NCBI RefSeq assembly: GCF_021869535.1
Contig: NW_026262593.1
Coordinates: 44,640,001-44,704,000, forward strand
Length of the DNA stretch: 64,000 nucleotides
Source of the DNA: Mytilus californianus
Lineage: Eukaryota
Direction: 5' to 3'
Shown piece after piece: positions 1 to 38,762 of the stretch; positions within the stretch are counted from its first letter, which is position 1, and each line of letters begins with the position of its first letter. A program made the translations under genes and the position numbers. The notes below the pieces were generated by a model that saw nothing but the letters and a program-made list of their open reading frames with translations, did no database searches and was not told the origin of the DNA.

Positions 1-41
1 TGAATTATAGAACTTCAAGAGCAACAAAAGGGCCACAGTGA
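1..41 (+). CDS. 3' end of the last coding exon of an upstream paralog of the SUEL-like membrane receptor family
   Basis: Reads (V)NYRTSRATKGPQ* with TGA at 39-41, matching gene C's end VNYRTSKAT*. About 900 bp of 3' flank aligns by eye with 38735-39600. Confidence 0.7.
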   Translation, partial: NYRTSRATKGPQ

Positions 42-2578
42 CTGTAATGAAGTATCTAGAAACAACGATTGTAATGATTTGCTAATTCAACCTTTACATG
101 GAGTTTGTAACAAATAAATAACTTGCATTAAAACAATGAGGTTTATATGGATATTATTTCAAAATCATATAAATTAACTTCCATACGACGGATGTAGTCA
201 CTGGTTTTACATAAAATGTTCACCCTTCCAGAGAACCTTTAGTCTTTTTCTAAAGGTTAATGTTGATTTGTAGTGTTTTTATGATGTTGTTGCTTGTTTT
301 TTTTAATTTTTCAACAAGCCGGTTTTTTTTCTGTCTGTAACGGTTTTGTATATCCTAGTAAAAAACTACTTTACGAACGTTCATATTAGTCAAACATTAA
401 GGCAAGAGAATTTGCACGAACTGTGTGTACAAGTAAGCGTGAGACAAGACAAGAGACATATATTAATCTAATTGTATTATGGTTTTATACAAAATTTATC
501 AGTTTTGACACAAGGAGTGCAATTCGTTGAAGAATTTCTGACCCTTACGTAGCATAAGGATTTTAATGAGGATGCTGATGTTGTTCAATGTTTCATATAC
601 TATTTAGTGTTGTGCTGACTATTTTTTATCCATTCGTATTTTCTTTCCCTTAAACAAAAATATAAATATGGCTTTTTTTAACGACTATTTTGGAAATTCA
701 AAATTGACGAAAACTAGATATGAGCCATGTCAATGCATTACACGATTCTTTTATTTAACGTGAGTAGAAGTAGAATAAAAGAACCTTTCTGTTATAATAG
801 TATTAAGATATCTAAAATGTACCACTTTCAACTGTGTACAAATAAATATTGAAGTTTAATAATTCCAATATTTTTTCTTTATTTTTCAAATACAACTAGT
901 ACTCGAAATACATATGAAGATATTGTCGTCGTCTATCTGTATCTAACTTTAATGAAGTTGTACATTCCATAGATCTATACATGCCTATTAATTACTTTTA
1001 CGTTAACTTTGTAATCCTTATATTGAGCTCATAAGAAGTTATTTAATTGTAAAAATACCATGCACATTTTAGTGCAGAACACTTAGTTTACATGTTAGTA
1101 GGTATGACATGTTTTATGATGTATATTCACATACTTCTGTGAAGAAATTAACCTTCTAGATTATGTTGTAAATACAATTGTCATTATAGTGAATAAAATG
1201 TTTATTAAAAGTGGAAATATTGAGATTACCTCAAAATATGATAAAAATTGATAAAAGCTATTCATCCATATTGGTATTATAAAAGTAAATACTTGTCATT
1301 TAGAATAAAAATAAATAGATAAATTGATAAATATTTGTCATTACATGTATTTATCTCGGTACTCTCTCGGAAGATGGAAGAAAACAATTACTGTCTTTTG
1401 TTTCGATTAATATGTGGTTTAATTAACTTAGGAAAAAACTGATATTTACTTCGGCCGTTGGCCTCAGTAAATATTGGTTTTTCCAAAGTCAACACAACCA
1501 CATATTTACCTCATCAAAAGACAGTATTTGTGTATAATGATAACCGTAATCTATTGTTTGATAATCATCTATCAAAATTTGTGCATTAAGTCATACGTTG
1601 GGGTTTTGAAAGTGTTGAACAAGTACACATTCCAGTTTGAAGAAATTCAGCGCTCCATACAAAATATTCTCTCTGAAACACTTTTTATTCACAATAAAAT
1701 CACAAAAAAAGCATTCATTTCTTTAGATGGTCATGAAAGTATCATTATAGATAGTTTAATAGTAGCATTATATAAGTATTTTGTTTTCTACTATAGTTCT
1801 TGCAAACTGAGAGCTGCTTTACATAACTAATTGTTAAAATTACATATAACAGCATATGAATTGTATTGCATTTTGTAATCTTTTGTAAAATGCTATTTAT
1901 ACAATATCCATTAGGAGAAAAAGTGATAGTTATTGATATACTTTCAATTATTTGTATTCGTTAATAATGTTACAAAGGCAACAGTAGTATACAGATCTTC
2001 AATAAATATAAGTCGATAAAACAGATACGGGTAACAAACTAAAATCGAGGAAAACACATCAAGTATAATAGGAAAACAACGGAACAACAGAAACACAGAA
2101 CTACAACGAAAGAAAACGCCAACATACACAGAAACAGACTGTAGATAACAACTGCAATATTCCTGACTTGGTACAGGACATTTTAAGAACAGAATGGTGG
2201 GTTGAACCTGGTTATAGGGCTAGCCACACCTCCCGCTTATATGACAATGTTAAAAATACGGCTAAAATGACAACACTTCGTTACAGGAAAACAACAAACA
2301 CACATACGCAATAACACTTAACACATTAATATTATAGTACATTACAACATGTAAACCGCAGAATAACAACGAACACCTCCCATGAATTTACGACAGCCCA
2401 TCAGGACACCGTAAACGAAATATAAATTTCGCGTCACAGGAATAAATCAAAAATCTAAATTTTTTGTGACATTTATATTATCACAGGTAAATTTCTAAAA
2501 ATAAAATAGATTTGTTTTTTTTATAGGCACGTACAAAAATACTTGACAGTTTAACATTCTATTTTTCTATACATCTAT

Positions 2579-2836
2579 AAGAAATGAACGTGAACCAAGA
2601 TCAAACCTGATGCCTCAAAGAAATAATCTCACATATGATGATGATCACAGGTTATGAAATCCAAATACATATCAGATTTCAGTTTTAAATCCCGGATACA
2701 GCAAACCATTGTTATACACAGCAGATGCAGCTAGCGATAATAACTGTGATCTACCATCATACAAAGAAGATGTCGGAAACATATTCTTACAAACTAGCAG
2801 GTATGCTGTAGATCACCAAAAGCATCGAATGTGTAA
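2579..2836 (+). pseudogene. Orphan dead copy of the cytoplasmic-tail exon (exon 6) of the receptor family
   Basis: Translates RNEREPRSNLMPQRNNLTYDDDHRL*NPNTYQISVLNPGYSK...DLPSYKEDVGN. In-frame TGA at 2655-2657; acceptor CTAG mutated to CTAT; no upstream exons seen. Confidence 0.75.
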
Positions 2837-2989
2837 CAGTGATTGTGTTCTAGTATCAAGAAAAAAACCCAATATTTTTATGATTTGCTTATATAAGTTT
2901 GTCATGGAAATTTTAATCAATTAATGCTCTGCATTTAGATATATGAGAGGTTTATTGGGTTAATATTTGAACATGTGACCTAACGAAGT

Positions 2990-3245
2990 AGACTTATCAA
3001 TGGGTTTTATACTACATGAGTACAACGACGGTACCATATGTGGAACAGTATCTGCTTACCATCCTGGGCGCCTAGGATCACCCGGGTTTGGTGAAGTTGC
3101 TGCTGCTCAGTCTTAGTTTTCTATGTTGTGTTATGTGTATTCTTGTTTGTCTGTTGTCTTTTTCTTTTTAAGCTATGACGTCGTCAGTTTATTTTCCGAC
3201 CTATGATGAGTTTGAATGTCACTTTGGTATTTTTTGCATCTCTTT
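2990..3245. mobile_element. Dispersed repeat family 4 (GAGCACCTGAGATCACC...GAGTTTGAATGTCCCTTTGGTATC)
   Basis: Copies or fragments at 4850-5040, 6350-6400, 25490-25860, 27190-27360, 28545-28730 and 48420-48600 (inverted). Confidence 0.7.
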
Positions 3246-3629: not shown

Positions 3630-3880
3630 ACAAAACCAGGTTCAACCCACCATTGTTTTCTTAAAATGTCCTGTACCAAGTCAGGAAAATGGCCATTGTT
3701 ATATTATAGTTTGTTTCTGTGTGTGTTGCATTTTAGTATTGAGTTTCTGTTATGTCGTTGTTATCCTCTTATATTTGATTTGTTTCCCTCAGTTTTTGTT
3801 TGTAACCCGGATTTGTTTTTTTCTCAATCAATTTATGAATTTCGAATAGCGGTATACTACTGTTGCCTTTATGTATTTAA
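3630..3880. mobile_element. Dispersed repeat family 3 (...GTAACCCGGATTTG...GTATACTACTGTTGCCTTTA)
   Basis: Copies at 1970-2255 (inverted), 5370-5505, 18045-18140 (inside gene B exon 2) and 47130-47425. Confidence 0.8.
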
Positions 3881-5514: not shown

Positions 5515-5655
5515 GGTTATCTGCATATAATGTAAAATATAAGCTGCTCGACACAATTTGAAGACTTTTTGAACTCGTTCGCTGCGCTCACTCGACAAAA
5601 AGCTTGATATTGTGACTCGTAGCTGATATTTAACAATATCCATATGCAGACAACC
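5515..5655. repeat. Imperfect palindromic (MITE-like) element
   Basis: GGTTATCTGCATAT/ATATGCAGACAACC outer arms, nested inner arms around TCGCTGCGCTCACTCG. Confidence 0.6.
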
Positions 5656-7859: not shown

Positions 7860-10800
7860 ATGGTGACAACAACATTATATTTGTTGTTTGCTACGATGCT
7901 GTTCGCACAAGGTGTTACAAGTCAACGTCTCTTAAAAAGTAAGCAATAACTTGTTATCTTCTTTCATAAAAATATTTTTTATTGATTGATTTCTGTTACA
8001 AACCAGCGTGTTTACCAATATTTTTTGGAGAAGAAATCCAGATTAGATAACTTTTGAACCAAAATATCTGCAAACCGTTTGTTTTGTTGTGATAAATAAA
8101 TGTAAAAAAATGAATAAAAAAAACTGATTTTTAACTGTTTTATGTTCCTTTTGTTAAATCTTTAAATACTGGAAGTTACTTACAGTCCTTTTTGATTATT
8201 TAACTGTTTCAGTTTTTATACGTCCTTGGCTTTCAAATATTTGGGATTGAGCGTTCCTGATCAAGGTTAATCCAAAAAGCGCTTTGGACGCATGGAATTT
8301 ATAAAGTGTTCTATCCAGGGCTTTTTAAAGATTAACTTTGCATTTGATAATGTAAAGTGCATATATGAATTAGGTGCCATGATTTAATATACTTTGTTCT
8401 TTTACATTATCTGAATCCCACAGTTTCGGTAGCGCTCTTCTTTTGTCTTTTGTTTTAAATGTAGTCTTTTGTAAACTGTTATTTGTCTTTTTTTTTCACA
8501 GTGTCGTATATCTTTCGTCGACAGATGTGATTTGACAGCTCAAATTTGTTGTCTCAACCTCAAGGCATAATTTATTAGAAACTTCCTGAAATTCCTTAAA
8601 TTTTCCATTTCTAAATTTAGAAATCATGAAGAAACTAAGGTTTCAACTTATATAAAAATAAGGAGATGTGGTATGATTGCCAATGAGACAACTATCCACC
8701 AAAGTTCAAATGAAGAAGATGTAAGCAATTATAGGCAACCCTACGGCCTTCAACAATGAGAAAAAACCCATACCGTATGGTCGGCTACAAAAGGCCCCGA
8801 CATGAAAAATATGAAACAATTCAATGGAGAAAACTAACGGCCTAATTTATAACAAAACAGTTTACGAAAAACAAATATGACAGACATGAACCAACGACAA
8901 CCACTGAATTACAGGCTCCTGACTTGGGACAGGCACATAAAGAATGCGGCGGATTTAACATGTTCGTGAGCGCTCAACCCTCCCCTAACCTGGGACAGTG
9001 GTGTCACAGTACAACATAAGAATAAACTATAAAAATCAGTTGAAAAAGGCTTGTCGTATATAGATTTGGCTATTATGTTTATGACTTTTTTGGTCATTAG
9101 CTCTTCAACTGTTTCGGTTCTTATATGTCACTTGATTTATAAATATTCCACTCTGAGCGTTCTTGTTGAAGTTAAATCAAGAAAAGAGCTTGTTTTCATT
9201 TTTTCAAGAACGATTGGTACCACAAAATTTCACTGTACGATAAAAACCTTAATTATTGTTTAGCACAAAACAAATTTTTCTGGAATAAAATTCACATGGT
9301 GAGTCCAAACGGTAAGAAAGCTTAATAATAAAAAAAAAACAACATATGGTAGCACCAGCCCCCCCCCCCCCCCAAAAAAAAAAAAATCAATCTGAACAAT
9401 ACAGTCAAAACAGTGTTAGGTCAACTCTGTATTATATTTCATACTCATTTTTTAAAACAACTTTCATACTTTTTTTAATGGAAATTATGATTGTCTACGT
9501 TCAAACATTCATACATGTGTGAGCCAAGGCTCCGTGTTGAAGGCCGTACTTTGACCTATAATTGTTTCCTTTTTACACATTGTGACTTGGATGGAAATTT
9601 GTCTCATTGGCACTCATACCACATCTTCTTATTTATGTTTTCTTGATATAATAAAAAGGGTACATAATTTATTTACTCGAAACTCGTTAGTTTAGAACCC
9701 TTTTTTAATACAATAAAATAAATGATATTTCTTATTCAATAATAAAGAAAAAATTGTCTATTAAAAATAAAGGATCGTCATATTAAAAAATGAAAATAAC
9801 ACTATAAGTTGTATTATTGTATTTACTTATTATGTTTGTTTGTTTTTGTTCACACATTGTTGTCAATATAATGGCATTTATGCGACTGTCATACAAGTGA
9901 GAGGTTTAGCTAGCATAAAAACCAGGTTTAATTCACCTTATTCTACACAAGAATGTACCATGTCAGGAATATGACAGTTGTTTACCATTCGTTTGATGTG
10001 TTTGAGCTTTTTATTTTGCCATTTGATAAGGGACTTTCCGTTTTGAATTTCCTTGGATTTCTGTTTTTTTGTTATTATACTGTTTGTATGCGCTCGAAGC
10101 GCTTTTATTGATTAACTTTCATTAGGCACTCTCAAAACCAAATATTTGAAAGCCAATGATGTATCAGTACATAAACATGTGAAGAGCTGTAGACCAAATG
10201 GACAGGAATAAATAGCCAAATGCATGTATACCTTGCCTGAGTGGGTTAGAACTTTTGTTTCTTAATGATTGACACATTTATAAACGGACAATGCAAATAA
10301 GGTATGTTATAAATCATAATCATAATCATAATCATAAATCGGGTCATTTGAATGCAAAGCTATTTTACAATTCTTATTCATAATTACATTTGTGTTTGTA
10401 GGAAATGTATGTATGTATGACGAAGTTGTCTTAAATTGTCATTACAAACAGTCTATCGTTATAACGGATATTTTATACAGATCCCGGTTGAATATTTTTG
10501 GGAACCGAAGCTCATGTAAAGCCTGGACCCAACCATGGTATGATTGCAAACCCTCCATTTCCTACAAACCTTTACAAAAGCAGTGTATGGGGGAAGATAC
10601 ATGTACAGTAGTTATGGACTACAATCCATGCTCACAAGATCCTTTGTTGTATGCTACTATTTACTATAAATGTACAGGTATGTTTTAATATAATGAGTTC
10701 TTAGAAACTGTAATTGGTAGAAATTATTAAAAGTACAGTTTACCACGCAAATAAAACCAAAAGATCTTTCTTTTAAAAAATGAATTGAAAACTTTGAGCA

Positions 10801-13113
10801 TAGATTTGTCATACATTTTCTATAATATCCACATGTTGTTGAAAATATTATTATAATTTGATATTATATTTTTTTTAAAAACAAAACGTTACTTATATCG
10901 TACTTTCAGTATAAAATAAGGAGATGTTGTATGATTGCCAATTGAACAACAATCCACCAGAGATCAAATGCCGTTGATGGTAGCAACTGTTTTTGTTTGC
11001 TCAAACATACGTTTTGAACCCTTAGGTTACATTACCATATATACTTTAATTTTATTTCAAGAATCCGGATTTGGACCAGCTGATCCCTATCCACTTATCA
11101 AATTCTATGGCAATCGTGTAACGACAACTACATCTATTCGTATGTATATCATTTAAACTTGTGACAAGTACTCAATTTGAAACGTCATTGGTATATTATT
11201 TATAACACAGGTACAATCCGTGCAAACATTTTTTTAATAAACATGGAAGCAACAGTTAGTGATCTTGGCTATTTGATCTTATTGATAGCAAAGGATAGGT
11301 AGACAAGTAAATAATGATGAATTGAAGCAATCTTCATTTATATTTTAGTTTTGTGTTTGTACAAGTCGACAAAACATTACAACATTTGATTGTTTTTTTT
11401 CTTGAACAGTATTATAAAGAATTACTCAACGCTTGTATTATATATGTGTATACATATTATTGAACATCAATACCGTCCTCATTTTGCTTATTTAAGGCAA
11501 CAGTATTGCGAACTATTGCCATTGTTTTCTGCTCATGAATAGCAAGAAATATGAGAATTTACACTTTTAAAGCATGAATTTAAATTGGTTAGTATTTCAT
11601 AATCTTACGTTCTCTGTGTATAATTCATGGCCTATTTTAAACGTTCATCGTATCATTCGACAATGGTGGTGTCTGCTTTTTCCTATTATAAAATAAACAC
11701 AAATGAAATATTTCTTTCATGTGATTCTGTTTTGAAATTCTGTACAATTTACTTCACATCAAATGCTTTTGTTCTGCAAATTTCTTGTCGCTGCTGTTGA
11801 AATTTTAGCGGAAGTATAACAATCGATATTAGACTGTAGGGTGACATTTTGTGTATCTGTTTTATACACATTTTGATACTGTTGGCGATATAGAGCTTAA
11901 CGTGGTTACATTGAAATATTGCGATTACCTAGCTAGAAAACCATGATTATTGAAAACCTGTTAGCTTTTGTAATTTAGATGATATATATTTCTATATTAA
12001 GCTGATATACCAATAGCTTATAAGGACCATAAAAACGACGATGATGACAACGACGACACAAAGGATCAAATCCACAATGACAGTCAAAGCAACAAAGCAT
12101 GTATGTCAACATTTTTATGATAGTTAAAAAAATAAAAACGTAAATAATTATACATGAAAATTATTTTCTTTCATAATGTATGATATAACAAACTTGGTCT
12201 TTTTAAAGCCTAATAATATATTCCTTAATAAAACAGAATTAACTTAAACAACGATCTGAATTGTCATTCACTTAATATGTATATGTTTGTGTGTGTGTGT
12301 CTGTAAAAAAAATCTAGTTTTTCTGAAACTTAAAAGAAGGGAAAACATGCAGGCAACAAAGGTTTGTCGTTGTAGTAGTACGAAGGAAATATAATACATC
12401 TTGTTTCTTCATTTCTATATCATGAATTGAGTATTTTACAAAACTAAAGATACAAGTCCCTCGGAAAAAGATTACCTTATACCAATTTAACAGGTTTTAT
12501 GGGTCTTTCAAACGTTTAGTGTTTTGGCTATTCTCACTTTTGATTTCAAGATTTTTCCAGAAAAATGTGCATCAGTTTTACTCTTTGAGAAACAAATCAT
12601 TTGCACGTTGAAATTTGTAGACAGTTAACATAGGGCCAAAATTAACACTTTTGGAGTTCCACACTTATCTTCAACATAGGCAAATTATTATGCCAATAAG
12701 ATGTGCGTAAAAGTTCAGTTATTTAATTGGTTGGATTGATAGTGCAAGAAATATTTGTATTTCTTACTCCTGGTAAGTTAACTATTGTCTTTTGAATTAC
12801 AATGCACTTGGATTACACAACAATAAACAGACAAATCTTTCAATTCCTTTTAAAGTTTTGTTATGTTTTTCAGTAAAAATTGGACTAGGGACAGCTTTAG
12901 GTATCACATCGATCACAGCGATTATTGCTCTGATTTGCTTTCTAAAGTTTAGGTTAGTCTATTAGATCACTTTTCTTAACTTTTAAACTTTTGCCATTGT
13001 TTGAATTGGAAAGAAGATAGAAATTCCTATTGCTCACAAGAAAAGGTAAAGAAAACAATAATCCCGAACAAAGACAAGTTAACAGAAATTAAAGATTGAA
13101 CAACATGCATCAA

Positions 13114-13144
<31 letters not shown>

Positions 13145-14707
13145 CAAAAAACAAAACAAAACAAAACAAAAAAACAAGAACAAAAACAGAAACAAAAACG
13201 ATACAGAAAGAACACCCTAGAAACAAAATGTTAGCTGAATGAAAAGCAGTTCCTGCTCAACCTATGTGATACACCGTGTTACAAAGAACTTAGAACTTGG
13301 TAAGTCGTATACGGAGACACATTATGAACAAAAAAGTAGCACTTGATTGTCGGTATAAGTCAAGATACGTAAAAATATGAGTGACGCTCGAATACAAAAA
13401 AAATTAAAAAGGCCACAAAGAAGCCCTTACTGTATCTGATAAACTTTTTGATCAGATGAAACAATCATTTATAGTCAACACATTAGTTATTTGGCTAAAA
13501 GTTATCATCTTATAGTTGTTTCTTCCTATATTACAGACTGTCTGATACAATGCATAAACCCAAAACTTTAGGATCACCATGGTGATAATTCTTTCAAAAT
13601 TTTTCGTTTGTTAGTTATAACATGTATAATGTACCTGTTTATTTTTAAAAAAAGTAATTTGCTATCCAGCTTACAGTGTTAAGTTTGTGGAATTGCTTGA
13701 TACAAATCAAACGACTTCCTGTGAATTAATTATTAAACGTTAAATACATATAAACAACACAAATAACGCACCATATCTTACCATGTAAATTTTTCACATT
13801 TGTTTTTATTTTGCTACAAATTTGTTGAAATCTAGTATATTCTAAGCATAACCTTGAAATTAATTCAGAGTTTACATAGAAATTTTCATTTTAGTGGTGA
13901 CAACGGAATTGTCAACAACAATTTTCAAAAATCAGAAACCAGTCAATTTCAAATTGATCATTAGAAAATCATAAGGAAACTGAAAGTTAAAGTCATTATT
14001 GTTGTCTTCAGGTGAAAAGATATACCGACCTTAAGTTTTCAAAAATATTGACTCATTCTTTTTCTTTTTTGATTTTTTGAGATGTCTAAAATTAAATATA
14101 AGAAAATTCTCAGTTTCACAGAATTCGGTGTTTATGACTTCAGAAACGTGTCAAGATTTGGGCTAATTTTTAATCACTTTAGAAGATGGTACATGCAGTA
14201 GAAATGTTTACTCTAAAGAAATTAATGGAGGTGTTGCGTTTCCTTTGCTGTTGGGTATATATGGCTCTAATTTGTTTACATTAATTCATTTCTTGTGTTT
14301 TGTAAAATGTTATTTTATACAATAATCATAAGGATGAACAATAAGAGTTAATATAAAGAGCTTTCTTTAAAATGCATATTTTAATTAATGAAACATAATA
14401 CTTGACATGAACGAAGCTGTCAAATACATTTTTATTCTATTTTGCAATACTGTTTAGACTGAACAAATGTGAACAAAGACTAAACCTGACTACTCACAGA
14501 AACCGTCTGACGTTTGATCCCGATCACATGTTTCAAAACCAAAGTTTATACCAGATTTCAATTTCAAATCCAGGATACAGCAACCCAATGGGAAACAGAG
14601 TAGATACATCTAACGAGAACGATTATGCTCTGCCTTCATATGAAGAAGCCGTCGGAAACACATATGAACAAGTGAACTATAGAGCAGCAAATGTATCAAA
14701 TGTGTAA
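7860..14707 (+). CDS. Gene A: type I membrane protein with a SUEL/galactose-lectin-like ectodomain, Asp-rich stalk, TM and tyrosine-motif tail (286 aa)
   Basis: Six GT-AG exons: 7860-7938 (MVTTTLYLLFATMLFAQGVTSQRLLK), 10402-10677 (8-Cys domain ...CMGEDTCTVVMDYNPCSQDPLLYATIYYKC), 11062-11139, 12002-12100, 12874-12952 (TM LKIGLGTALGITSITAIIALICFLKFR), 14458-14707. Phases 1,1,1,1,2 join into an 861-nt open frame. All exons are conserved in gene C. Confidence 0.85.
8648..9060. mobile_element. Dispersed repeat family 1 (ATAAAAATAAGGAGATGTGGTATGATTGCCAATGAGAC...GGCTCCTGACTTGGGACAGGCAC)
   Basis: Copies or fragments in both orientations near 9525-9640, 10910-10980, 18360-18420, 18860-18960, 35450-35490, 43560-43985, 45175-45570, 56184-56468, 61070-61290, 61560-62152. 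Confidence 0.8.
10402..10677 (+). CDS. Gene A exon 2: SUEL-type lectin-like domain
   Basis: Eight Cys with SUEL-like spacing (LxC..IxI..xY; C; C; CxGxxxC; xPC...YxC); symmetric phase-1 exon of 276 nt. Confidence 0.75.
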
Positions 14708-24466: not shown

Positions 24467-24636
24467 AAATATATATATATATATATTTGCGAAAGCAAAT
24501 TTACAGATCTAACATTGTTGGGCTGATGTTTAGACGAGTTGTGTATATATACAGAATGTACGCAGCCATGTATCACCATCATTGCTGGTGATCCGATGGA
24601 TAAATCTGTTGTAGAGTTGTCACTAGTTCAGACGTA

Positions 24637-24637
<1 letters not shown>

Positions 24638-24670
<33 letters not shown>
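24638..24670. repeat. (TA)n microsatellite; another at 24468-24486
   Basis: Directly visible; the two tracts flank the partial SINE-like copy. Confidence 0.9.
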
Positions 24671-24674
<4 letters not shown>

Positions 24675-29898: not shown

Positions 29899-32800
29899 AT
29901 GGTGGGAACACTAATACATTTGTTGTTTATAATGCTGTTCGCTCAAAGTGTTTCAAGTGGACATTTCTTACACAGTAAGCAATAACTGATTATCTTCTTT
30001 CTCAACATATAGTTTATACGTATCTTCTTATTTAACGTTTACTGTTATAAAATTTCTTCATCATTTCAAATTAAGGAAATCCGGGTTTTGCTTTACATTT
30101 TGTCCTTTTTGGTAGGTTTTGGATTATCAAATATTTATGCCGCAACCATCACCGAAGATACATTAATTGACGAAATGCACATCCCATTCATTACAATTGA
30201 TACAGTTAATCTTGTAAATGTTATTTCCGATAATGTTTGGAGACAAAAACCAGTGTGATAAAGAACATTTGAATCATAATATCGGTTGAACATTTGTTAA
30301 ATTTTCGCTCTGAATAAAAAAATGTAGAGGAAATTTTAAAATCCCAAAACAATTATTAAACATTTTGTTTGCCCCTTGATAAATCTATAATACTGAAAGT
30401 ATGTTTGACCCTAAGTTCAATATTACTATTCGTTTGTGTCATGTGTGTATCGAAATTAAGTGTCATGGATCAATTTAAGAGAGATCCGAAAGATACCAAA
30501 GGGATAAACAAACACAACATAGAAATCAAAAGAATATATCCCTCCTTTTCCATTGTCTTATATTCACATTTTATGTGAGGGTTCGTCTTTCACAAACTTG
30601 TTGTCTGTGTAATCATTTATAGAATGTTGTTGTTATGATTGTCGTGGTTTAGTTTTGGCCATGGTGTTTTTTGTCGTCCTTTGACTGATATATTCGACTG
30701 TTCCTTATTATCGTCTTTCCCTTAAAAACAATTGGTATTACACAATATTTGTGTACGATATAAACAATCAATATGTATGTGCCCAAAAAACATGATCCTA
30801 GAATTAAAATCATACGGTTTTTTCGAGATCAAAAGTGAAGGAAGCAAAACAAACATCAGCGAGCTCCTAAACCAAAACAATATAAATTATTCAGCCAAAA
30901 TGTTCGTTGTTTTCATTTCAAACTACTTTTTGATAACACCTTGCATATTTCGTAAACTTGAAATTTTGAAGGTGTGCGTTATTTTTTCTTATAGGTTTTT
31001 ACTTGTTTTGTATTTACTTTTAATGCAACATGTGGTTTTTACGATTCAAATCTATTTATCTATATTATAACACATAATTATATTGCTATTTGTAGAAAAT
31101 ATATGCATGGATGCCGAAGTTGTCTTAAAATGTCCTCACAGACAGTATATTGCTATAACAAATATATTGTACAAATCAAATTGGAATATTTTTGAGTGGA
31201 AGTCATTTAAACCGATCTTTTGTAAAGCATTGACCCCCAACTGGGCTGATTGCAAATCCTCAATTTCATACAAATTCCTACAAGACCAGTGCAGGTGGGA
31301 AGATACATGTACAATAGTTATTGACTACAATCCATGCTCACAAGATCCTTTGTTGTATGCTTCTGTTTACTATAAATGTACAGGTATGCTTTATTTATGG
31401 ACTTCCTAGTAACTGTAATTGGTAGACATCATTTGAAAACATTACCGCAATTGATAGCTGCTAGTGTACAACAAGACCAGACCCGTTATAGCGAACGGCT
31501 GTCATGTTTGTAAAATCTACAGTAGACAAAGAAGCTTGATTTCGTTGTTAGGAAACAAACATTAACATAAAAAATCGATATCAATTAAAATAAAACGAAA
31601 CTCAACGTCCACGGTTTCCCTCTTCATCTTCACACAGTTACTATCATTGTTTTCATAGGGCAATGCAAGGTTCATGTTCGGAACCATATTGAAATATATT
31701 GGTTTAACTAATGTCATGCAATTATTTTATCACATAATCTATAATTATGTTTATAAAGAGATATATTCCTTCTGATAAGAAATCATCAAGTTTGTATGAT
31801 GTATGTTATTTATAAATTATATATGTTTGCATCAATCAAATTAAAATAAAACGAAATCCAACGTCCACGGCTTCCCTCTTCATCTTCACACAATTACTAT
31901 CATTGTTTTCATAGAGCAATACAAGGTTCATGTTCGGAACCATATTGAAATATATTGGTTTAACTAATGTCCTGCAATTATTTTATCACATAATCTATAA
32001 TTATGTTTATAAAGTGATATATTCCTTCTGATAAGAAATCATCAAGTTTGTATGATATTTGTTATTTATAAATTATATATGTTTGCATCAATCCTACACT
32101 AATCTAGTGTTTCGGCGGTATTTTTTTTATATATGATGAATAAAATATTGTGATAGGTCCGCCATTTTTCAGGGATTGTCCTATATACTTAAAAAAAATA
32201 TTGTTTCTTTACCTTGGTCGATGTCAGAATATCTGCTAAATTTCTGTGCCTTTTATAAGCAATCATCGGTGTTTTTGTAAATACTTCATTGCAAACCATA
32301 TTATTTCTTATGAGATGCCAATGTTTCAGAAGGTGTTTCCGTAATTTGCTTATGCAAGGGTTATATTAAGTAGCGATTACAAGAGGAATATCATCTTTAC
32401 TTTTCCCTTCCTTAGTTGAAAACAAATGTTGTTTTCTTTCCTTGGTTAAGGCTTCATTGAAGCAAGACATGATTTCAGTGTCATTGTAACCCCTATTTAT
32501 CAAATTCTGTTAGAATTTCTCTAAGGTCATTATCATTGTTTGTTGATCTTCTGTAACGAATTCCTTCTCCCCGGATAAATGCTTTAATCACAAGTCCTTA
32601 TGAGAGCTTTTTCTGTGCAAATATAGAAAAGAATTCGTTGGTTTGAAATGGGTTTTCATGTCTAATGTATTTTCTGCTTGAAATCTTCTGCCCTTGAATA
32701 AATGAACGTCTAGAAAAGTTGTGTTAGATTCTGAAATTTCATATGTGAATTTGAGAAATTTGTTGTGGCTATTAGCCAATTTAAAAAATACTTCTAATTC

Positions 32801-35800
32801 ATGTTTTTTACCGTGGTGAATTATTATTTCATCATCCATGTATCTGGCATAATAGGATATGTTTGTCTTGTAAGGAAATGACGAAAGAATTTCTTTCATT
32901 ATTTGATATACTCACTACAGCTGTGATGCACAAAACATGAGTTGTCGTCAATGCAGCCTCGGAAATTTAGAGACAATCTGAAACCAGGTGAGAGGTCAAG
33001 CATATCTTCACTTTTGCGAGACGAATCAATTCTTATTAAGAAAGCTGATAAAAGCAACAATGTTGTTATTCTCGATAAGAATATTTACTTATCCGAAGCT
33101 TAACGGCAATTACAATCGCATCATTACACAAGTCTTGACGGTTTTGACTTCAAGGTTTTCAGAAATAATATCAATGATTATGTCACTAGAATGCACATTC
33201 ATAAAGACATTGACAAAATTTCATTCAAATACATGATGAATGGCAATCAAAAAAATTACGGACCGGGACAAATGCATATATTACCGAAAATACATAAAAT
33301 AAATTTTGTAGATTATGACAATGTCATGAGTGTAGGATTTAATATTGATTTAATAGTTCCTCCAGGAAGACCTATGATTTCCCAGATTGGTACGATCACT
33401 GAATACATAGGTCGTTAGTTTGATTATTTCCTTGTGCCAATAGTTATAAAACACCATACTTTTATCAGAGATTTATCTGATTTTATACAAAAAATAGAAA
33501 CAAACCATTAGACAATTGCCTATTATGTAGTTTTGTTATAAGTCAGATGTTTACCAACTGTCCAATTGAAGAAATTCTTTTAGCAGTAAGAGCAGCATAT
33601 GATGCATATGATAAATCGCATTACAATATAAAATATCCCTCTACAGATGATTTAGTATCCCTCTTTGTTCTGCAATATAATATCTTTGAATTTAATGATC
33701 AATTATATCAACAATGTTTAGGTTCCGCAATTGGGGCCTGCTGTGCACCAGCATGTTGTAATATTTTATTATATCAAATAATGAAAGAAATGCTTTCGTC
33801 ATTTCCTTACAAGACAAACATATTTTATTATGCCAGATACATAGATGATGGAATAATAATTCACCACGGTAAAAAACATGAATTAGAAGAATGTTTTGAA
33901 TTGGCTAATTGCCACCACAAATTTCTCAAATTCACATATGAAATTTCAGAATCTAACACAACTTTTCTAGACGTTCATTTATTCAAGGGCAGAAGATTTC
34001 AAGCAGATAATATATTAGACATGAAAACCCATTTCAAACCAACGAAATAATTTCTATATTTGCACAGAAATAGCTCTCATAAGGAGTACGTGTTTAAAGC
34101 ATTTATCCGGGGGGAATTAATTCGTTACAGAAGATCAACAAACAATGATAATGACCTTAGAGAAATTCTCTTAAAGTTCAAACAGAATTTGATAAATAGG
34201 GGTTACAATGACACTGAAATCATGTCTTGCTTCAATGAGGCCTTAACCAAGGAAAGAAAACATTTGCTTTCAACTAAGGAAGGGAAACCTAAAGCGGATA
34301 TTCCTCTTGTAATGGCTACTAAATATAATCCTTGCATAAGCAAATTACGGAAACACCTTCTGAAACATTGGCATCTCATAAGAGATAATGTGGTTTGCAA
34401 TGAAGTAATCACAAAAACACCGATGATTGCTTATAAAAGGCACAGAAATTTATCAGATATTCTGACATCGACCAAGGTAAAGAAACAATATTTTTTTCAA
34501 ATATATAGGACAATCCCTGATGATGGCGGACCTATACATGCAATATAACAATATTTTATTCATCATATACAAAAAATACCGCCGAAACACTAGATTAGTG
34601 TAGGATTGATGCAAACATATATAATTTATAAATAACATATATCATACAAACTTGATGATTTCTTATCAGAAGGAATCTATCTCTTTATAAAAATAATTAT
34701 AGATTATGTGATAAAATAATTGCAGGACATTAGTTAAACCAATATATTTCAATATGGTTCCTAACATGAACCTTGCATTGCTCTATGAAAACAATGAGAG
34801 TAATTGTGTGAAGATGAAGAGGGAAGCCGTGGACACGTTGAGTTTCGTTTTATTTTAATTACTATTTCTAAAGTAGTTGTTAGAGAGGAATGGAGGAATA
34901 TGTAAACTACTAAGTTGTGTATCCATCAGAATACATTCATTAATATTTCATGCTTACAATTGAAATCTGAGAATCGATTTTTTAAATGTATAGGTTTAAT
35001 TTTTTCAGATTTCAAATATCTATGTACAAATACAATTACACTTTGATTCAAACATACGATTAGAATGAAGTGAACGAGGTTGATCCATGTTAAAGATCTC
35101 ACTGAATCTTTGTTATGCAGAACAGGAACGAGTGCGCCATGCGCTTGCTTTTGGATTTGTGTACATGTGGTGATTATGTGTCAAGAAGCACCATATCCAT
35201 GTATTCAATAATAGAATATTATAACGATGAAAAATATCACACTAAACTTGATTATTGGGAATGTATCGTTTTATATCTTTAAATGAAAACTCAGTGTACA
35301 AAACAAGTCCATTTAATGCATCCAAAATCCAGATCAGTCCAAAGATTTGTCTTTTATGAACCAAATGGAAAAATTTTAGCTTGTATGTATCATTCTTTTG
35401 CAATAATATCAACCTGCTATTAAAAATTTCAATGTTATAGTTATTTATATAAAAATAAGGAGATGCGGTATGATTGCCAATGAGACAACATTGTTCAAAT
35501 AAAGATGATGTAGCATATTTTTCGAATTGACGGCTTTTATTATAGTTTTCGAAATATTATTTTTTGTACATACACATACATGTTTGAACCTTAAGTTTAT
35601 TTAAAAATTCGTACCTTAAATGTATTTTTAGACACAGTATATGAACAAGTTGTTCCTTATCCACTTATAAAATACTACGGCAATGGTGTACCACCAACTA
35701 CATCTACAAAGAATCGTATGTATATCATTTAAAATTGTAATAAAAACTCAATTTAAACCGTCAATGTTATGAAATATATAACACAGATAGAATTCATGTT

Positions 35801-38762
35801 AGGCTTGTTTTGACGTATACATTAATGTATTAAAAAATTTGCATATCCCTTCCTGCTACGAAATGGGCGTATATGAATATATCTCACAAAAGACAGAACG
35901 TAAGGGGACGACCGTTTGATATTCTGAGAAGGGGAGGGGTATATTTTGTGAATTGACTATGAATGTTCATTTGATGCTACGCACTGTTTTTTTAAATAGC
36001 GCGAAAATTTATTTTCATGTATGTACACAACTGTTTCCTGCATTTTGGTTTGCACAATAAGATTAATATCTGACTTTTATGGTACGCTACTGAAGCACGG
36101 ATAATCATCCAAATATAAGTGAGTTCCCCGGTTCTATCACTGATCTATTTCTATTTGAATGTGAATTTGTGTAATTTAAGATATACAACGTTCTACATTG
36201 TAATCCCTTATTTTTCCATGGTTTTGTTAATAGAAAAACCTAATAACATTTAATAGTTAAGATAATAAAGCGCTTCAAATTGTTCTGTTCTTTTACATCC
36301 TTGGCTTTCAAATACTCGTTTTTGAGCGTTGCTGATGAAGGTAAATCTAGAAATAAGCGCTTCGGACGCATGAAATTTATAAAGTGTTGTATTCATTCGT
36401 TTTGAGCATTTCGAAATAAGTTTATAAAATTAAACATCTTATTTCAAAACTGTTTGAATTGATATATTTATATATATTTATTTATATTAAGCTGATACAT
36501 CATCACCTCATAAGCACCATAAAAAAGATGATGATGATAATGATGATGATGATGATGACGACGACGACGACAACGATAAACAATTCCACAACGAAAGCCA
36601 AAACAGCAAATCATGTGTGTGAACTTTTATTTGGTAGATGCAAAATACGCAAATTGTTATACGCGAATAGTGTTTTCTATATTAATGTAGGGTATGAAAC
36701 ATTGACCTATTAGCTGCCTTTGAATTTATTCCACAATTTAAAGAAATTTAAGTCAAGCATCGTTTTGCATAGTAATTCCGTATTTATATATATATTATTA
36801 GTATATTCCTTTATACTATTGAATAGTTCGGGTAGTCAACACAGGCAACAACGTTATGCAATGCAATAGTAAGTAGACAACATAATACAACTTTTCTGTA
36901 AATTTCCGTTTCATGAATTATGTAATTTAAAAAAGAACTGAGGTCACAGGTCCTTCGGGAAAAAAACCTAAGACGGGTTTGATTGGTTTAAGGGGAAGTT
37001 CATGCTTTCAAAGATTTTGTGTTTCGAGATGATTCACGAAAAATATGTCGTTAGCACGGAAATCGCTCGTTTAACAATTCATATGCACGTTCAAATATGT
37101 AAACACTAAACATATGGGAAGACAAAATAGTCTGTGTAAGGGAACTGTTGTTTAATTGTTCAGACAAATAATGCAAAGAAAAGTTATATTTATATAATTC
37201 TAAGAAGTTAACTAGTGTCATCTGAATCATATCCCGAATCTTGTTAGTTATAGTATTTTTTCTTAATTCACTTTAATCACATCATAATATATATTGACAA
37301 ATTTGTCAGTAAATTCTAAAGTTTTATTATGTTTTTCAGTAAAAATTGGACTAGGGACAGCTTTAGGCATTACATCGATGATAGCGATCATTGCTTTGAT
37401 TTGTATTCTTAAATTCAGGTAAGTCTATTAGTTCACTTTTCTTAATTTATGAATTTTTGGTGATCGTTATGAAAAAAAATATTGCACATAAAAAAGACAA
37501 GACGCACAATAATCCCAAATACAAAACATTTACATAAAAGTAAAAAACAAACCTGAACTCCACAGAAAAAAAAACTGTTCTGAATTAAGTATAACTGAAC
37601 GATAACTAGTTCTTTTTCAACACGTGGCGCATATCCTGTTGATTATGACATGCACTTTTGTGGAAGATAGCATTCGGAGATTAAAAATTAAAAGTCAATA
37701 AATATATTTATCATTCAAGTTATTTTGTTAATGTATATCCAGAATATATAAAAATATTAATGCAGTCATTTGTCATAAAAAGACAAACTGAGTGTTGACC
37801 AATACACTAAATTACACATTACATGTGTTGCGGCTTTTGCGCTTTTCTGGATTGGTATTAAACAAGAGCACTCTAACCCAATAAAATTTAAAAATATTTT
37901 TACTTTCTAGAAAATGATGGGAGCTATATTTATATGACCAAAACGAAGAGTGATTTGTATTAAATTATTTTGGTTTGTGTTGACACTATCAAAATGAGGC
38001 GGAAGATACCACGGGAACATTTAAAACCTATAAGTCGGTATTTAGCTGAAATTGCCATTGCAAAAGCAAATTCACAACAAAAAGACAAAAATATTTAAAA
38101 AAAAAACGAAAATTGTAAACTAAAGATTGATTAATATAAGACTGAACAATGTCGATTTTGGCATTGTGATATCTGAATACTATTTTCTTTTCAAGCAATG
38201 TTCTGACCGTCATACTTTGTTTCTAACAATTGCCAACTTTTTGATAGAGAAATTGATATATTTTTATCTTGTAAAGATATCATAAAATAGCTAGAATACG
38301 TAGGAATAAAGGGGATAATATAATATTGAGCTAAGGTTTTTACTTCAGCTCGTTTTGTTGTATTCTTTAAAAGGTTATTGTTCAAATATCATAAAAATGA
38401 TAATTTCTGTGGATGTTTTGTTTATTATCAAAATTTGTTCTGATAATAAATGCATATAGATCTTGTAATAAACGAAATATTTGTATTTAAGTATATAATA
38501 TTTTGCAATATTGTCTAGGAAGAAGAAAGGTGAACCAAGACCAAACCCAACGCCCCACAACAACCATCTGATTTATGATAATGATCACGGTTTTCAAAAC
38601 CCATGTTTATACCAGATTTCAGTTTCAAATCCAGGATATAGCCTAACAATGGTAGACAGCGTAGATACAGCTAGCGACATCGACAATGTTTTGCCTTCAT
38701 ATGAAGAAGCCGTCGGAAACACGTACGAACAGGTGAACTATAGAACTTCAAAAGCAACATAA
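29899..38762 (+). CDS. Gene C: type I membrane protein with SUEL-like ectodomain and long poly-Asp stalk (297 aa)
   Basis: Exons 29899-29974, 31096-31383, 35632-35715, 36492-36614, 37340-37418, 38519-38762. All are GT-AG with the same phases as gene A and give an 894-nt open frame. ORF-track hits 31083-31409 and 38511-38762 are exons 2 and 6. Confidence 0.85.
31096..31383 (+). CDS. Gene C exon 2: SUEL-type lectin-like domain
   Basis: KNICMDAEVVLKCPHRQYIAITNILYK...CKALTPNWADCKSSISYKFLQDQCRWEDTCTIVIDYNPCSQDPLLYASVYYKCT; the same 8 Cys as gene A. Confidence 0.75.
32089..32178 (-). ncRNA. Mutated hammerhead copy in the inverted PLE arm
   Basis: Same stems as the + copy, but the core reads CTGAAAAAT instead of CTGATGAT (G8 lost), so it is probably inactive. 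Confidence 0.65.
32200..32910 (-). pseudogene. Second, inverted partial copy of the same RT (YARYMDD through thumb and C-terminus)
   Basis: ORF 32899-32588 aligns with ORF 33547-34050 (YARYMDD vs YARYIDD; ANSHNK vs ANCHHK). Confidence 0.85.
32911..34490 (+). pseudogene. Degenerate PLE-type reverse transcriptase, 5'-truncated
   Basis: Motifs across stops/frameshifts: NLKPGE..IKKADKSNNVVILD..EA*RQL, GQMHILPKIHK, PPGRPMIS, QCLGSAIGACCAP, YARYIDD, TTFLDV, KPT..YLHRNSSH..KAFIRGELIRY, KRHRNLSDIL. No GIY-YIG domain downstream. Confidence 0.9.
34511..34608 (+). ncRNA. Type I hammerhead ribozyme at the 3' end of the PLE
   Basis: Stem I CAATCC (34511-16)/GGATTG (34603-08); core CTGATGA (34517-23) plus one bulged T; stem II GGCGG/CCGCC; GAAA (34584-87); stem III CACTA-gat-TAGTG; predicted cleavage after GTA at 34602. 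Confidence 0.8.

What the first reader, a model, noticed from the sequence alone, without database searches (positions are those of the whole stretch)
1..38762. Tandem birth-and-death cluster of an uncharacterised single-SUEL-domain membrane receptor family
Five copies or relics of one six-exon gene sit in about 39 kb: an upstream tail, an orphan exon, intact A, dead B and intact C. A and C keep exon phases, all 8 Cys, the TM and the tail motifs, while the ectodomain loops and stalk differ strongly. The 3' ends fall into two lineages (window start plus C; 2579 relic plus A). Rapid turnover with a variable ectodomain and conserved signalling tail is the pattern of invertebrate immune or recognition receptor families; that functional reading is inference. 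I recognise no named ortholog.
Basis: partly seen in the sequence, partly recalled or inferred. Interest (0 to 1): 0.7.

Follow-up and report, generated by a model that had tools for sequence, protein, structure and literature searches.

The report
Mussel SUEL-like membrane protein gene cluster
This stretch of a mussel (Mytilus) chromosome holds part of a small tandem cluster of genes and dead copies for a mussel-only surface protein with one degenerate sea-urchin-egg-lectin-type domain, a single membrane span and a tyrosine-motif tail; the family is real and unstudied, but it is an ordinary kind of bivalve gene cluster and its function is unknown.

Summary
It spans about 74 kb and holds six six-exon copies, all on the + strand, plus two orphan exons. 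Three copies lie upstream of the window: U1 and U2 (dead) and U3 (intact, its CDS ending at window base 41). In the window are A (intact), B (dead) and C (intact).

Exon 2 encodes a divergent SUEL/rhamnose-binding-lectin fold:
- all 8 Cys are in register;
- hhalign against canonical mussel SUEL exons gives 95% probability, E 3.8e-8;
- the Foldseek top 13 hits are all SUEL/latrophilin Lec domains.

It nevertheless stays below Pfam's cut-off, and both sugar-binding signature motifs are altered.

Relatives are almost confined to Mytilus: about three orthologous groups in five species, all named "uncharacterized" or "SUEL-type lectin domain-containing". Short spliced contigs from the M. edulis complex confirm the six-exon model.

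- The duplicates are old. The layout fits one block duplication of a three-gene unit.
- dN/dS is about 0.5-0.6, so there is no sign of diversifying selection.
- The tail as a whole is no more conserved than the ectodomain; only the TM and short tyrosine motifs are.
- The relic exon belongs to neither 3' lineage.

One RNA run showed no reads on gene A. The immune role is untested. The scan noted other lectin-head, tyrosine-tail arrays in this genome, but not this family.

The parts
1..41 (+). Last 41 nt of the CDS (stop TGA at 39-41) of upstream intact copy U3, followed by its 3'UTR, which is alignable to C's 3'UTR to about 300
   Evidence: The U3 exons lie at chr 44632363-44640041. The tail ends ..KGPQ like the M. 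coruscus ortholog P0001.
2574..2866 (+). Orphan relic of the last coding exon (in-frame stop, 8-nt insertion). No other exons accompany it.
   Evidence: It is equidistant (69-71%) from all six copies and lies outside both lineages.
7860..7938 (+). Gene A exon 1: ATG plus signal peptide, ends in phase 1
   Evidence: Hydrophobic N-terminus.
10402..10677 (+). Gene A exon 2: the whole SUEL-like domain, 8 Cys, phase 1-1
11062..11139 (+). Gene A exon 3: stalk with Thr-rich end, phase 1-1
12002..12100 (+). Gene A exon 4: acidic Asp/Asn-rich stalk, phase 1-1. It is absent from some orthologs' protein models.
   Evidence: Models lacking it are P0025, P0028 and P0031.
12874..12952 (+). Gene A exon 5: transmembrane helix, phase 1-2
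   Evidence: dN/dS is 0.09-0.37.
14458..14707 (+). Gene A exon 6: cytoplasmic tail with YQIS.SNPGY and LPSYEEAVGN.YE.VNYR, stop TAA at 14705-14707
15677..15755 (+). Pseudogene B exon 1 (still open)
17803..18155 (+). Pseudogene B exon 2: deletions of 12, 1, 3 and 4 nt, several stops, and a ~97-nt insertion at about 18045-18141
   Evidence: The insert is 89% identical to window 3775-3875 (family D13).
18308..18500 (+). Pseudogene B: intron block fused to the 3' end of exon 3. About 145 nt, including the exon 3 acceptor, are deleted relative to A.
19157..19255 (+). Pseudogene B exon 4
20200..20278 (+). Pseudogene B exon 5 (TM). No exon 6 was found downstream.
29899..29974 (+). Gene C exon 1: ATG plus signal peptide
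31096..31383 (+). Gene C exon 2: SUEL-like domain, 8 Cys, with a 4-residue insertion relative to A
35632..35715 (+). Gene C exon 3: stalk
36492..36614 (+). Gene C exon 4: acidic stalk with a longer poly-Asp run
37340..37418 (+). Gene C exon 5: transmembrane helix
38519..38762 (+). Gene C exon 6: cytoplasmic tail, stop TAA at 38760-38762

Best explanation
A, C and the upstream copy U3 are intact genes of a Mytilus-restricted family of type I membrane glycoproteins.

The architecture is shown. It runs: signal peptide; one SUEL/rhamnose-binding-lectin-fold domain stabilised by four disulfides; a short stalk that is Thr/Ser-rich and then poly-Asp; one transmembrane helix; and an ~80-residue disordered tail.

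The mechanism is inferred. The ectodomain binds an extracellular ligand. That ligand is probably not rhamnose or galactose bound in the canonical way, because the YGR motif is gone and the DPC loop is shortened. A protein ligand, as for latrophilin Lec domains, or an atypical glycan is therefore more likely. The invariant tail motifs are an NPxY (SNPGY), an LPSY (PY-like) and two YExx tyrosines (YEEA, then YE[EQ]V). They would recruit PTB, WW or SH2-type adaptors, or the endocytic machinery. The protein would then act as a ligand-binding, internalising or tyrosine-phosphorylated surface receptor.

The cluster arose by tandem duplication. The layout fits one old duplication of a three-gene block (U1-U2-U3 giving A-B-C). 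Half of the copies later decayed in this genome.
For: Gene models:
- A, C and U3 are intact six-exon genes with conserved GT..AG sites and phases.
- The same exon joins appear in full-length 287-289-aa proteins carried on Logan contigs of only 1019-1742 nt. Those contigs can only be spliced copies.
- RefSeq models in M. galloprovincialis, M. edulis and M. trossulus show the same joins.

SUEL fold:
- Weak Pfam hits, E 1e-3 to 2e-5.
- The profile search of 1.84 billion representatives reaches a canonical brittle-star rhamnose-binding lectin at E 4e-4.
- All Cys align with 21 canonical mussel SUEL exons.
- hhalign gives 95% probability, E 3.8e-8, over the full domain.
- The AF2 model has pLDDT 77.6.
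- The first 13 Foldseek hits are latrophilin/LAT-1 Lec, SUL-I and CSL3, with TM 0.60-0.66.

Constraint:
- dN/dS is 0.47-0.59 overall and significantly below 1 (Fisher p 0.007 to 1e-5).
- The TM exon has dN/dS 0.09-0.37.
- The tail motifs are invariant or nearly so in 16 sequences from five species and both lineages.

A protein-binding role for this fold in receptors has precedent in the solved complexes listed (teneurin-latrophilin Lec, TOL-1-LAT-1 Lec).

Block duplication: the reciprocal best intron-inclusive pairs are U1-A (5.0 kb, 78.7%), U2-B (3.7 kb, 78.6%) and U3-C (4.0 kb, 76.0%). The exon 6 tree agrees.
Against: - No reads fell on exons 2-6 of gene A in the one RNA-seq run available (about 10 million reads, 6% of the run, tissue unknown).
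- No full-length protein of A, C or U3 from this species turned up in the 15-billion-protein collection. Expression in this species is therefore unproven.
- Exon 2 stays below Pfam's gathering score.
- The good AF2 model needed canonical SUEL sequences in its alignment. The family-only alignment gave pLDDT 39.8, so the fold match is partly guided by that alignment.
- The tail motifs are short linear motifs that also occur by chance. No kinase, adaptor or ligand has been tested.
- dN/dS of about 0.5 is high for a constrained receptor.
- Of the four exonic differences listed for another individual's gene A, three change the protein.
Confidence: 0.55

Rival explanations
1. The family is an innate-immune pattern-recognition lectin receptor family. 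Its sugar-binding head diversifies quickly under pathogen pressure and it signals through a conserved tail.
For: - The head is lectin-type and the genes sit in a tandem cluster with dead copies.
- The ectodomain diverges quickly between congeners: U3 exon 2 is 69-75% identical to its M. edulis-complex orthologs.
- The most variable segment is the loop after the former YGR site.
- Other lectin-head, tyrosine-tail arrays have been noted in this genome (unchecked notes).
Against: - Exon 2 has dN/dS 0.28-0.71, not above 1.
- The tail diverges about as fast as the head.
- Both canonical sugar-binding motifs are altered (motif definition in PMC3269628).
- The tyrosine pair does not fit an ITAM.
- The copies are old and the M. 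edulis complex keeps only about three genes.
- There are no expression or challenge data.
Confidence: 0.2
2. In this genome the cluster is a decaying remnant. A, C and U3 are still open but are silent or on the way to loss, and only the M. edulis-complex orthologs are functional.
For: - Three of six copies, plus two orphan exons, are dead.
- Gene A had zero RNA depth.
- No protein model of A, C or U3 is on record, whereas orthologs in four other species are.
- dN/dS is fairly high.
- Of the four exonic differences listed for another individual's gene A, three change the protein.
Against: - Three frames of 286-297 codons remain open with every splice site intact in AT-rich DNA.
- dN/dS is significantly below 1, and the TM exon is strongly constrained.
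- All 8 Cys and all tail motifs are kept.
- The RNA test covered one run, 6% of its reads, one gene and an unknown tissue.
Confidence: 0.15
3. The protein is a developmental adhesion or guidance co-receptor in the manner of EVA-1/EVA1C or the latrophilin Lec domain. It would bind a protein partner in cell-cell contact rather than act as an endocytic or immune receptor.
For: - The nearest clusters by language-model features are arthropod SUEL proteins, a quarter of which carry the EVA-1 tail domain FAM176 (score 0.81, a lead only).
- The best structural matches are latrophilin/LAT-1 Lec domains solved in protein complexes.
- The sugar-binding motifs are lost.
Against: - There is no FAM176 match in the tail.
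- There is one SUEL domain, not two.
- A better EVA1C candidate lies elsewhere in the genome: C57 at about 19.72 Mb, where a FAM176 hit sits beside two SUEL hits.
- The family is genus-restricted and fast-evolving, unlike conserved guidance receptors.
Confidence: 0.1

Closest known systems
EVA-1 (C. elegans) / EVA1C (vertebrates): single-pass membrane proteins with SUEL-type lectin domains
   Same: Both are type I membrane proteins with SUEL-fold ectodomain modules and a short cytoplasmic tail. This is the nearest architecture by language-model features.
   Different: EVA-1/EVA1C have two SUEL domains and a FAM176 (PF14851) tail. Here there is one divergent domain and no FAM176 match. This family is confined to Mytilus, apart from one distant unidentified relative. 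The EVA-1 biology cited here is from my own knowledge and was not tested.
Lec (rhamnose-binding-lectin) domain of latrophilins/ADGRL and C. elegans LAT-1
   Same: These are the best structural matches to the exon 2 model (Foldseek probability 1.00, TM 0.60-0.66). The SUEL fold is used on a receptor, and the solved complexes show it binding proteins (teneurin, TOL-1).
   Different: Latrophilins are adhesion GPCRs with olfactomedin, GAIN and 7TM parts. This family has a single TM helix and none of those domains. Sequence identity is 17-21%.
Soluble SUEL/rhamnose-binding lectins (SUL-I 5H4S, CSL3 2ZX0, fish and bivalve RBLs)
   Same: They share a domain of about 95 residues, eight half-cystines in the same order, and the same fold.
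   Different: Those lectins are secreted, usually with 1-3 tandem domains carrying YGR and DPC..KYL motifs (PMC3269628). Here YGR is replaced by LY[RKH]S plus a variable insertion. FGDPC is shortened to YNPC. KYL becomes LLY. The domain is also membrane-anchored. The genome's 92 or more canonical SUEL exons do not include this cluster.
Other Mytilus tandem arrays of lectin-head, single-pass, tyrosine-tail receptors noted by this scan
   Same: They share the overall design and tandem birth-and-death genomics in the same genome (unchecked notes).
   Different: Those families have C-type-lectin or WSC heads. The tail exon of this family finds no match outside its own cluster, so no shared tail module was detected.

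Membership tests
SUEL / rhamnose-binding lectin domain (Pfam PF02140) | Scores above the Pfam gathering threshold (31.4 bits) | tested here: not met
   A scores 19.8 bits, C 17.2 and the M. coruscus ortholog 15.4. The distant relative P0020 scores 25.4. The cluster is not among the genome's 92 PF02140 hits.
SUEL / rhamnose-binding lectin domain (Pfam PF02140) | Eight half-cystines in the conserved order and spacing (four disulfides; PMC3269628) | tested here: met
   Cys 3, 12, 38, 48, 61, 67, 76 and 90 of the A exon 2 translation. The seven that lie inside the Pfam domain align column for column with 21 canonical mussel SUEL exons. Disulfide pairing itself was not tested.
SUEL / rhamnose-binding lectin domain (Pfam PF02140) | Homology detectable by profile-profile comparison over the full domain | tested here: met
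   hhalign of the family against canonical mussel SUEL exons gives probability 95%, E 3.8e-8, over columns 10-94 against 1-79. The profile hmmsearch reaches a brittle-star RBL at E 4e-4 in 1.84e9 proteins.
SUEL / rhamnose-binding lectin domain (Pfam PF02140) | SUEL/RBL three-dimensional fold | tested here: met
   AF2 gives pLDDT 77.6 and pTM 0.66. Foldseek ranks 1-13 are all SUEL/RBL/Lec domains. Caveat: the alignment used contained canonical SUEL sequences, and the family-only alignment gave pLDDT 39.8.
SUEL / rhamnose-binding lectin domain (Pfam PF02140) | YGR motif -(AN)YGR(TD)- (PMC3269628) | tested here: not met
   It is replaced by ILY[RKHNE][ST], followed by a variable insertion of 7-11 residues.
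SUEL / rhamnose-binding lectin domain (Pfam PF02140) | DPC motif -DPCxGTYKYL- (PMC3269628) | tested here: not met
   YNPC is preceded by a 4-5-residue deletion of the FG(D) loop, and LLY replaces KYL. Only the P-C and the Tyr are kept.
SUEL / rhamnose-binding lectin domain (Pfam PF02140) | Binds L-rhamnose or D-galactose | not testable with these tools
   This needs the recombinant ectodomain and glycan or sugar binding assays.
EVA-1 / EVA1C | Two tandem SUEL domains | tested here: not met
   There is one SUEL-like exon per gene.
EVA-1 / EVA1C | FAM176 (PF14851) TM-plus-cytoplasmic domain | tested here: not met
   There is no PF14851 hit at E up to 1 in the tails or in full-length P0001. The genome-wide PF14851 scan does not hit this cluster.
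Latrophilin / adhesion GPCR | GAIN domain and seven-transmembrane region after the Lec domain | tested here: not met
   The full-length orthologs are 284-312 aa with one hydrophobic span. No Pfam hits point to these domains.
ITAM-bearing immunoreceptor tails | YxxL/I, then 6-8 residues, then YxxL/I | tested here: not met
   The tail reads Y-E-E-A, four residues, then Y-E-[EQ]-V. The spacer is too short and the +3 residues are A and V. The ITAM consensus is from my own knowledge.
Birth-and-death tandem multigene family | Tandem paralogs on one strand, with intact and pseudogenised copies and orphan fragments | tested here: met
   There are six copies plus two orphan exons in 74 kb, of which three copies are intact and three carry stops, frameshifts or deletions.
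Birth-and-death tandem multigene family | Rapid, recent turnover (young duplicates, species-specific copy sets) | tested here: inconclusive
   The paralogs are old: dS 0.30-0.54, and intron-inclusive identity 76-79% for the closest pairs. The U3 lineage is shared by five species. Even so, A and C lack close orthologs in M. coruscus, and the M. edulis complex has only about three genes. Presence/absence among individuals was not tested.

The most novel reading that the evidence does not exclude
In mussels the SUEL fold has been repurposed from a sugar-binding lectin into the ligand-binding head of a genus-specific receptor that signals through tyrosine phosphorylation. The tail (NPxY, LPSY, YEEA/YEEV) would act like a Src-family-kinase-phosphorylated transmembrane adaptor. 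That would make it an independently invented immunoreceptor-like system in a lophotrochozoan.
Probability: 0.12. Interest if true: 0.6.

Novelty: new variant of a known kind. Interest (0 to 1): 0.3.

Why it matters
Bivalves have no adaptive immunity and carry many lineage-specific families of lectin-like surface proteins, almost none of which has a known ligand or signalling route. This family is small (about three genes per species) and clean (one domain per exon). Its short tail has a handful of invariant tyrosine motifs, so it would be a tractable case for asking how such receptors signal. It also shows a SUEL domain that keeps its disulfide scaffold while losing both sugar-binding signatures. 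That is relevant to how lectin folds drift towards other ligands. As genomics it is ordinary: an old tandem cluster with pseudogenes, already present in databases as uncharacterised proteins.

Tried and rejected
- **Family-only AF2.** The first AF2 run used a family-only alignment of 20 rows and gave pLDDT 39.8, so I did not use it for fold search.
- **PDB sequence search.** The family profile gave only a marginal hit to SUL-I (E 0.027).
- **Distant relative.** I searched for the genomic context of the distant relative (P0004/P0017 cluster, 39% identical, from unidentified metagenome contigs). The metagenome scan confirmed nothing, and the own-genome search shows it is not a Mytilus californianus gene. 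Its organism stays unknown.
- **EVA-1 membership.** Tested and rejected.
- **TMEM51.** Weak hits to the tail (E 0.12-0.15) I treated as noise from a shared PSYEE-like motif.
- **Tail look-alikes.** Atlas hits for the tail (poxvirus A36R, SCIMP, LIME1, syndecan/neurexin tails) all scored below 0.9. I kept them only as an analogy.
- **Literature.** The searches found no paper on this family.
- **Joined protein.** I handed no joined (spliced) protein of A, C or U3 to any tool. All searches, folds and dN/dS counts were done exon by exon, or with database orthologs as full-length proxies.
- They allowed one call, so only gene A exons 2-6 were tested against RNA.

Full report
**Setting.** The window is G000:C13:44640001-44704000 of a 1.65-Gb Mytilus genome. 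Earlier notes of this scan call it the California mussel. I did not verify the species name. Every close protein relative is from Mytilus, and the nearest are from M. coruscus.

**Observation.** A direct-repeat scan and exon-by-exon alignments show three collinear copies of one six-exon unit on the + strand, plus two 3' fragments.

Gene A has these exons:
- 7860-7938
- 10402-10677
- 11062-11139
- 12002-12100
- 12874-12952
- 14458-14707

Gene C has these exons:
- 29899-29974
- 31096-31383
- 35632-35715
- 36492-36614
- 37340-37418
- 38519-38762

All introns are GT..AG, and the phases are 1, 1, 1, 1, 2 in both genes. The frames are open for 286 codons in A and 297 in C. By my arithmetic, a stop-free frame of 286 codons in DNA of about 30% G+C is expected by chance at about 6e-11.

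Gene B (15677-20278) is dead:
- Exon 2 has deletions of 12, 1, 3 and 4 nt, several stops and a ~97-nt insertion.
- A deletion of about 145 nt removed the exon 3 acceptor.
- No exon 6 is detectable.

Window 2574-2866 is a lone last-exon relic with a stop and an 8-nt insertion. Window 1-41 is the end of the CDS of an upstream copy.

**The cluster is larger than the finding.** Six-frame searches of the whole genome with A's exon 2 and exon 6 found six matches each, all within C13:44.609-44.679 Mb. After fetching 60 kb upstream, blastn placed three more complete copies and an orphan exon 3.
- **U1** (chr 44606695-44613600) is dead. It has two stops in exon 2, one of which replaces a conserved Cys. 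It also has a stop in exon 4, charged residues in the TM, and a lost stop codon.
- **U2** (chr 44614594-44625802) is dead. It has a stop and a Cys-to-Tyr change in exon 2. In exon 6 a 15-nt deletion is accompanied by NPGY changed to NRGS and a premature stop.
- **U3** (chr 44632363 to window 41) is intact, with a 291-codon frame.
- The **orphan exon 3** lies at chr 44604691.

Lesions are documented.

**What the protein is.**
- Exon 1 is a hydrophobic signal peptide.
- Exon 5 is a hydrophobic span of about 21 residues flanked by Lys and Lys-x-Arg.
- Exons 3 and 4 are a Thr/Ser-rich and then a poly-Asp/Asn stalk.
- Exon 6 is an ~80-residue tail.
- Exon 2 encodes the whole ectodomain module.

**Evidence that exon 2 is a SUEL domain.**
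- Pfam gives only sub-threshold SUEL_Lectin hits of 15-25 bits against a cut-off of 31.4.
- A scan of the genome with PF02140 finds at least 92 canonical SUEL exons, none of them in this cluster.
- All cysteines align with 21 canonical mussel SUEL exons.
- hhalign gives 95% probability, E 3.8e-8, across the full domain.
- A profile search of 1.84 billion representatives reaches a bona fide brittle-star rhamnose-binding lectin at E 4e-4.
- The AF2 model built with a mixed alignment has pLDDT 77.6. Its first 13 Foldseek hits in the PDB are latrophilin/LAT-1 Lec, SUL-I and CSL3, at TM 0.60-0.66.

One caveat applies. A family-only alignment gave an unusable model (pLDDT 39.8), so the fold result leans on canonical sequences in the alignment.

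The two motifs that define sugar-binding RBL domains (YGR and DPC..KYL; PMC3269628) are both altered:
- YGR becomes LY[RKH]S, followed by a variable insertion.
- FGDPC becomes YNPC, with 4-5 residues deleted.
- KYL becomes LLY.

I therefore file the domain as a divergent SUEL-fold module whose canonical sugar binding is doubtful.

**Relatives and names.** The exhaustive profile search found only eight proteins at E up to 1e-3. They are:
- two Mytilus sequences: the M. coruscus protein P0001 and the unnamed Logan fragment P0002, which matches the M. edulis-complex C-like gene;
- two representatives (P0004 and P0005) of a 39%-identical exon from an unidentified eukaryote in metagenomes, which is not in this genome;
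- the brittle-star lectin;
- three repetitive false positives.

The word search with the M. coruscus ortholog returned 14 proteins. Twelve are named Mytilus proteins (coruscus, galloprovincialis, edulis, trossulus), and the two unnamed ones, from Logan contigs, belong to or match the same clusters. The named ones are called 'uncharacterized protein', 'unnamed protein product' or, automatically in UniProt, 'SUEL-type lectin domain-containing protein'.

M. galloprovincialis, M. edulis and M. trossulus each have three loci. In M. galloprovincialis these are LOC143056666, LOC143056740 and LOC143055968.

Three Logan contigs of 1019-1742 nt encode full-length 287-289-aa proteins of the C-like group. 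A genomic copy spans at least 7 kb, so these contigs must be spliced. Their sequence follows exactly the six-exon joins proposed here. This supports the splicing model, but for M. edulis-complex orthologs and not for the genes in this window.

No paper on the family was found.

**Expression in this genome.** One RNA-seq run from the study of the best DNA holders was laid on window 9400-15300. Among about 10.3 million reads (6% of the run), depth on A's exons 2-6 was 0 to 0.2. A DNA run covered the whole stretch at about 30x with scattered differences. Of the four exonic differences listed, three change the protein (H13P, S27F, and F to S at the TM end) and one is synonymous.

No protein of U3, A or C appeared in the word search, although orthologs in four other species did. 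Expression of A, C and U3 is thus unproven. The test covered one gene, one run and an unknown tissue.

**Evolution.** Per-exon Nei-Gojobori counts, summed without joining sequences, are given below.

| Pair | dN/dS | dS |
|---|---|---|
| A-C | 0.59 | 0.38 |
| A-U3 | 0.47 | 0.54 |
| C-U3 | 0.55 | 0.30 |

All three ratios are significantly below 1 (Fisher p 0.007, 1e-5 and 0.004).

| Exon | dN/dS range |
|---|---|
| Exon 5 (TM) | 0.09-0.37 |
| Exon 2 (SUEL-like domain) | 0.28-0.71 |
| Exon 6 (tail) | 0.43-0.79 |

Only the 25-codon signal-peptide exon exceeds 1, on very few sites.

Between U3 and its orthologs, exon 2 is 93% identical to M. coruscus and 69-75% to the M. edulis complex. The tail is 85% and 71-80% identical respectively. 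The whole protein evolves quickly. The tail as a whole is not markedly more conserved than the head.

What is conserved in all 16 tails from five species is YQIS.SNPGY and (A)LPSYEEAV[GS]N.YE.VNYR.

**History of the cluster.**
- Intron-inclusive alignments give reciprocal best pairs U1-A (5.0 kb, 78.7%), U2-B (3.7 kb, 78.6%) and U3-C (4.0 kb, 76.0%).
- Given the order U1-U2-U3-[relic]-A-B-C, this fits one duplication of a three-gene block. That is an inference.
- U3 is 93% identical in exon 2 to its M. coruscus ortholog but only 68% to C. It groups with orthologs from four species. The duplication therefore predates those species splits.
- A and C have no comparably close ortholog among annotated M. 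coruscus proteins. This suggests differential loss or gaps in annotation.
- The exon 6 tree gives two well-supported lineages: (U3, C) and (U2, (U1, A)). The relic lies outside both, 69-71% identical to all copies.

**Mechanism (inferred).** The protein is a surface-exposed SUEL-fold head on a probably O-glycosylated, acidic stalk. Its ligand is unknown. The loss of the sugar motifs, together with solved latrophilin Lec-teneurin and LAT-1-TOL-1 complexes, makes a protein or atypical glycan ligand plausible. The tail combines an NPxY, a PY-like LPSY and two YExx tyrosines. By established knowledge of such short motifs, these bind PTB, WW and SH2 or AP-2 partners. The tyrosine pair does not meet the ITAM spacing. 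Atlas look-alikes of the tail are tyrosine-phosphorylated single-pass adaptors and similar proteins, all below the reliable score. They are an analogy only.

**Comparison with known families.**
- The nearest architecture is EVA-1/EVA1C. Membership fails on both defining features: two SUEL domains and a FAM176 tail.
- A better EVA1C candidate lies on C57 near 19.72 Mb.
- The family is not a latrophilin, because it has a single TM.
- It is a divergent member of the SUEL-fold superfamily, in a new membrane-anchored, single-domain arrangement.

**Limits.**
- The spliced full-length proteins of A, C and U3 were never joined or submitted. Database orthologs served as full-length proxies.
- No N runs occur in the window.

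**Verdict.** This is a real, genus-restricted, uncharacterised receptor-like family in an old tandem cluster with pseudogenes. It is ordinary for a bivalve genome and moderately interesting as an example of a SUEL domain that has lost its sugar-binding signatures.

Noticed in passing
window 9400-10187 (intron 1 of gene A): A very abundant interspersed repeat. Summed contig word depths reach 3e5 to 2e6 in all DNA-like runs, with hundreds of RNA reads on both strands and sharp loose ends at 9517, 9632-9636 and 10050. A smaller repeat lies at 10779-10975.
   Followed up: no
window 31583-34860 (intron 2 of gene C): Retroelement remains with reverse-transcriptase ORFs (RVT_1 E 3e-6 at 33547-34050). 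A partial inverted copy lies at 32588-32899, and a 255-nt direct duplication lies at 31583-31837 and 31839-32093 (96%). Other notes of the scan call it Penelope-like.
   Followed up: partly
window 21555-22295 and 24485-24653 (between B and C): Two 300-nt copies 441 nt apart at 97% identity, and a third partial copy 2.5 kb further on at 94-98%. This is a young local repeat in the stretch where B's missing last exon would be expected.
   Followed up: no
window 18045-18141 and 3775-3875: The ~97-nt insertion that disrupts B's exon 2 is 89% identical to a segment near the orphan relic. It is probably a small mobile element.
   Followed up: no
exon 4 (A 12002-12100; C 36492-36614): The acidic stalk exon is phase 1-1. 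It is absent from several orthologs' protein models: M. trossulus LOC134693207 isoform X2, M. edulis P0028 and M. coruscus P0025. It may therefore be a cassette exon. Its poly-Asp run varies in length between copies, made up of GAT/GAC repeats.
   Followed up: partly
G000: C110 44.49-45.28 Mb and 88.13-88.31 Mb; C121 25.13-25.25 Mb; C165 47.18-47.65 Mb; C143 and others: The genome carries at least 92 canonical SUEL-lectin exons, most of them in tandem clusters. This is a large expansion, separate from the family studied here.
   Followed up: no
G000:C57:19715656-19729120 (- strand): A weak FAM176 hit (26.9 bits) sits next to two partial SUEL hits. This is a likely true EVA1C ortholog of the mussel.
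   Followed up: no
proteins P0004, P0005 and P0009-P0022 (metagenome contigs up to 396 kb): An exon 39% identical to exon 2, with the same YNPC and ISYK.LQD.C signatures and the same exon end. It is seen on many contigs of JGI, ENA and Logan metagenomes. It is not in this genome, and its organism is unknown. It suggests the subfamily exists outside Mytilus.
   Followed up: partly
chr 44604691-44604773 (about 35.3 kb upstream of the window): An orphan copy of exon 3 lies 2 kb upstream of U1. It is a further relic of the family.
   Followed up: no
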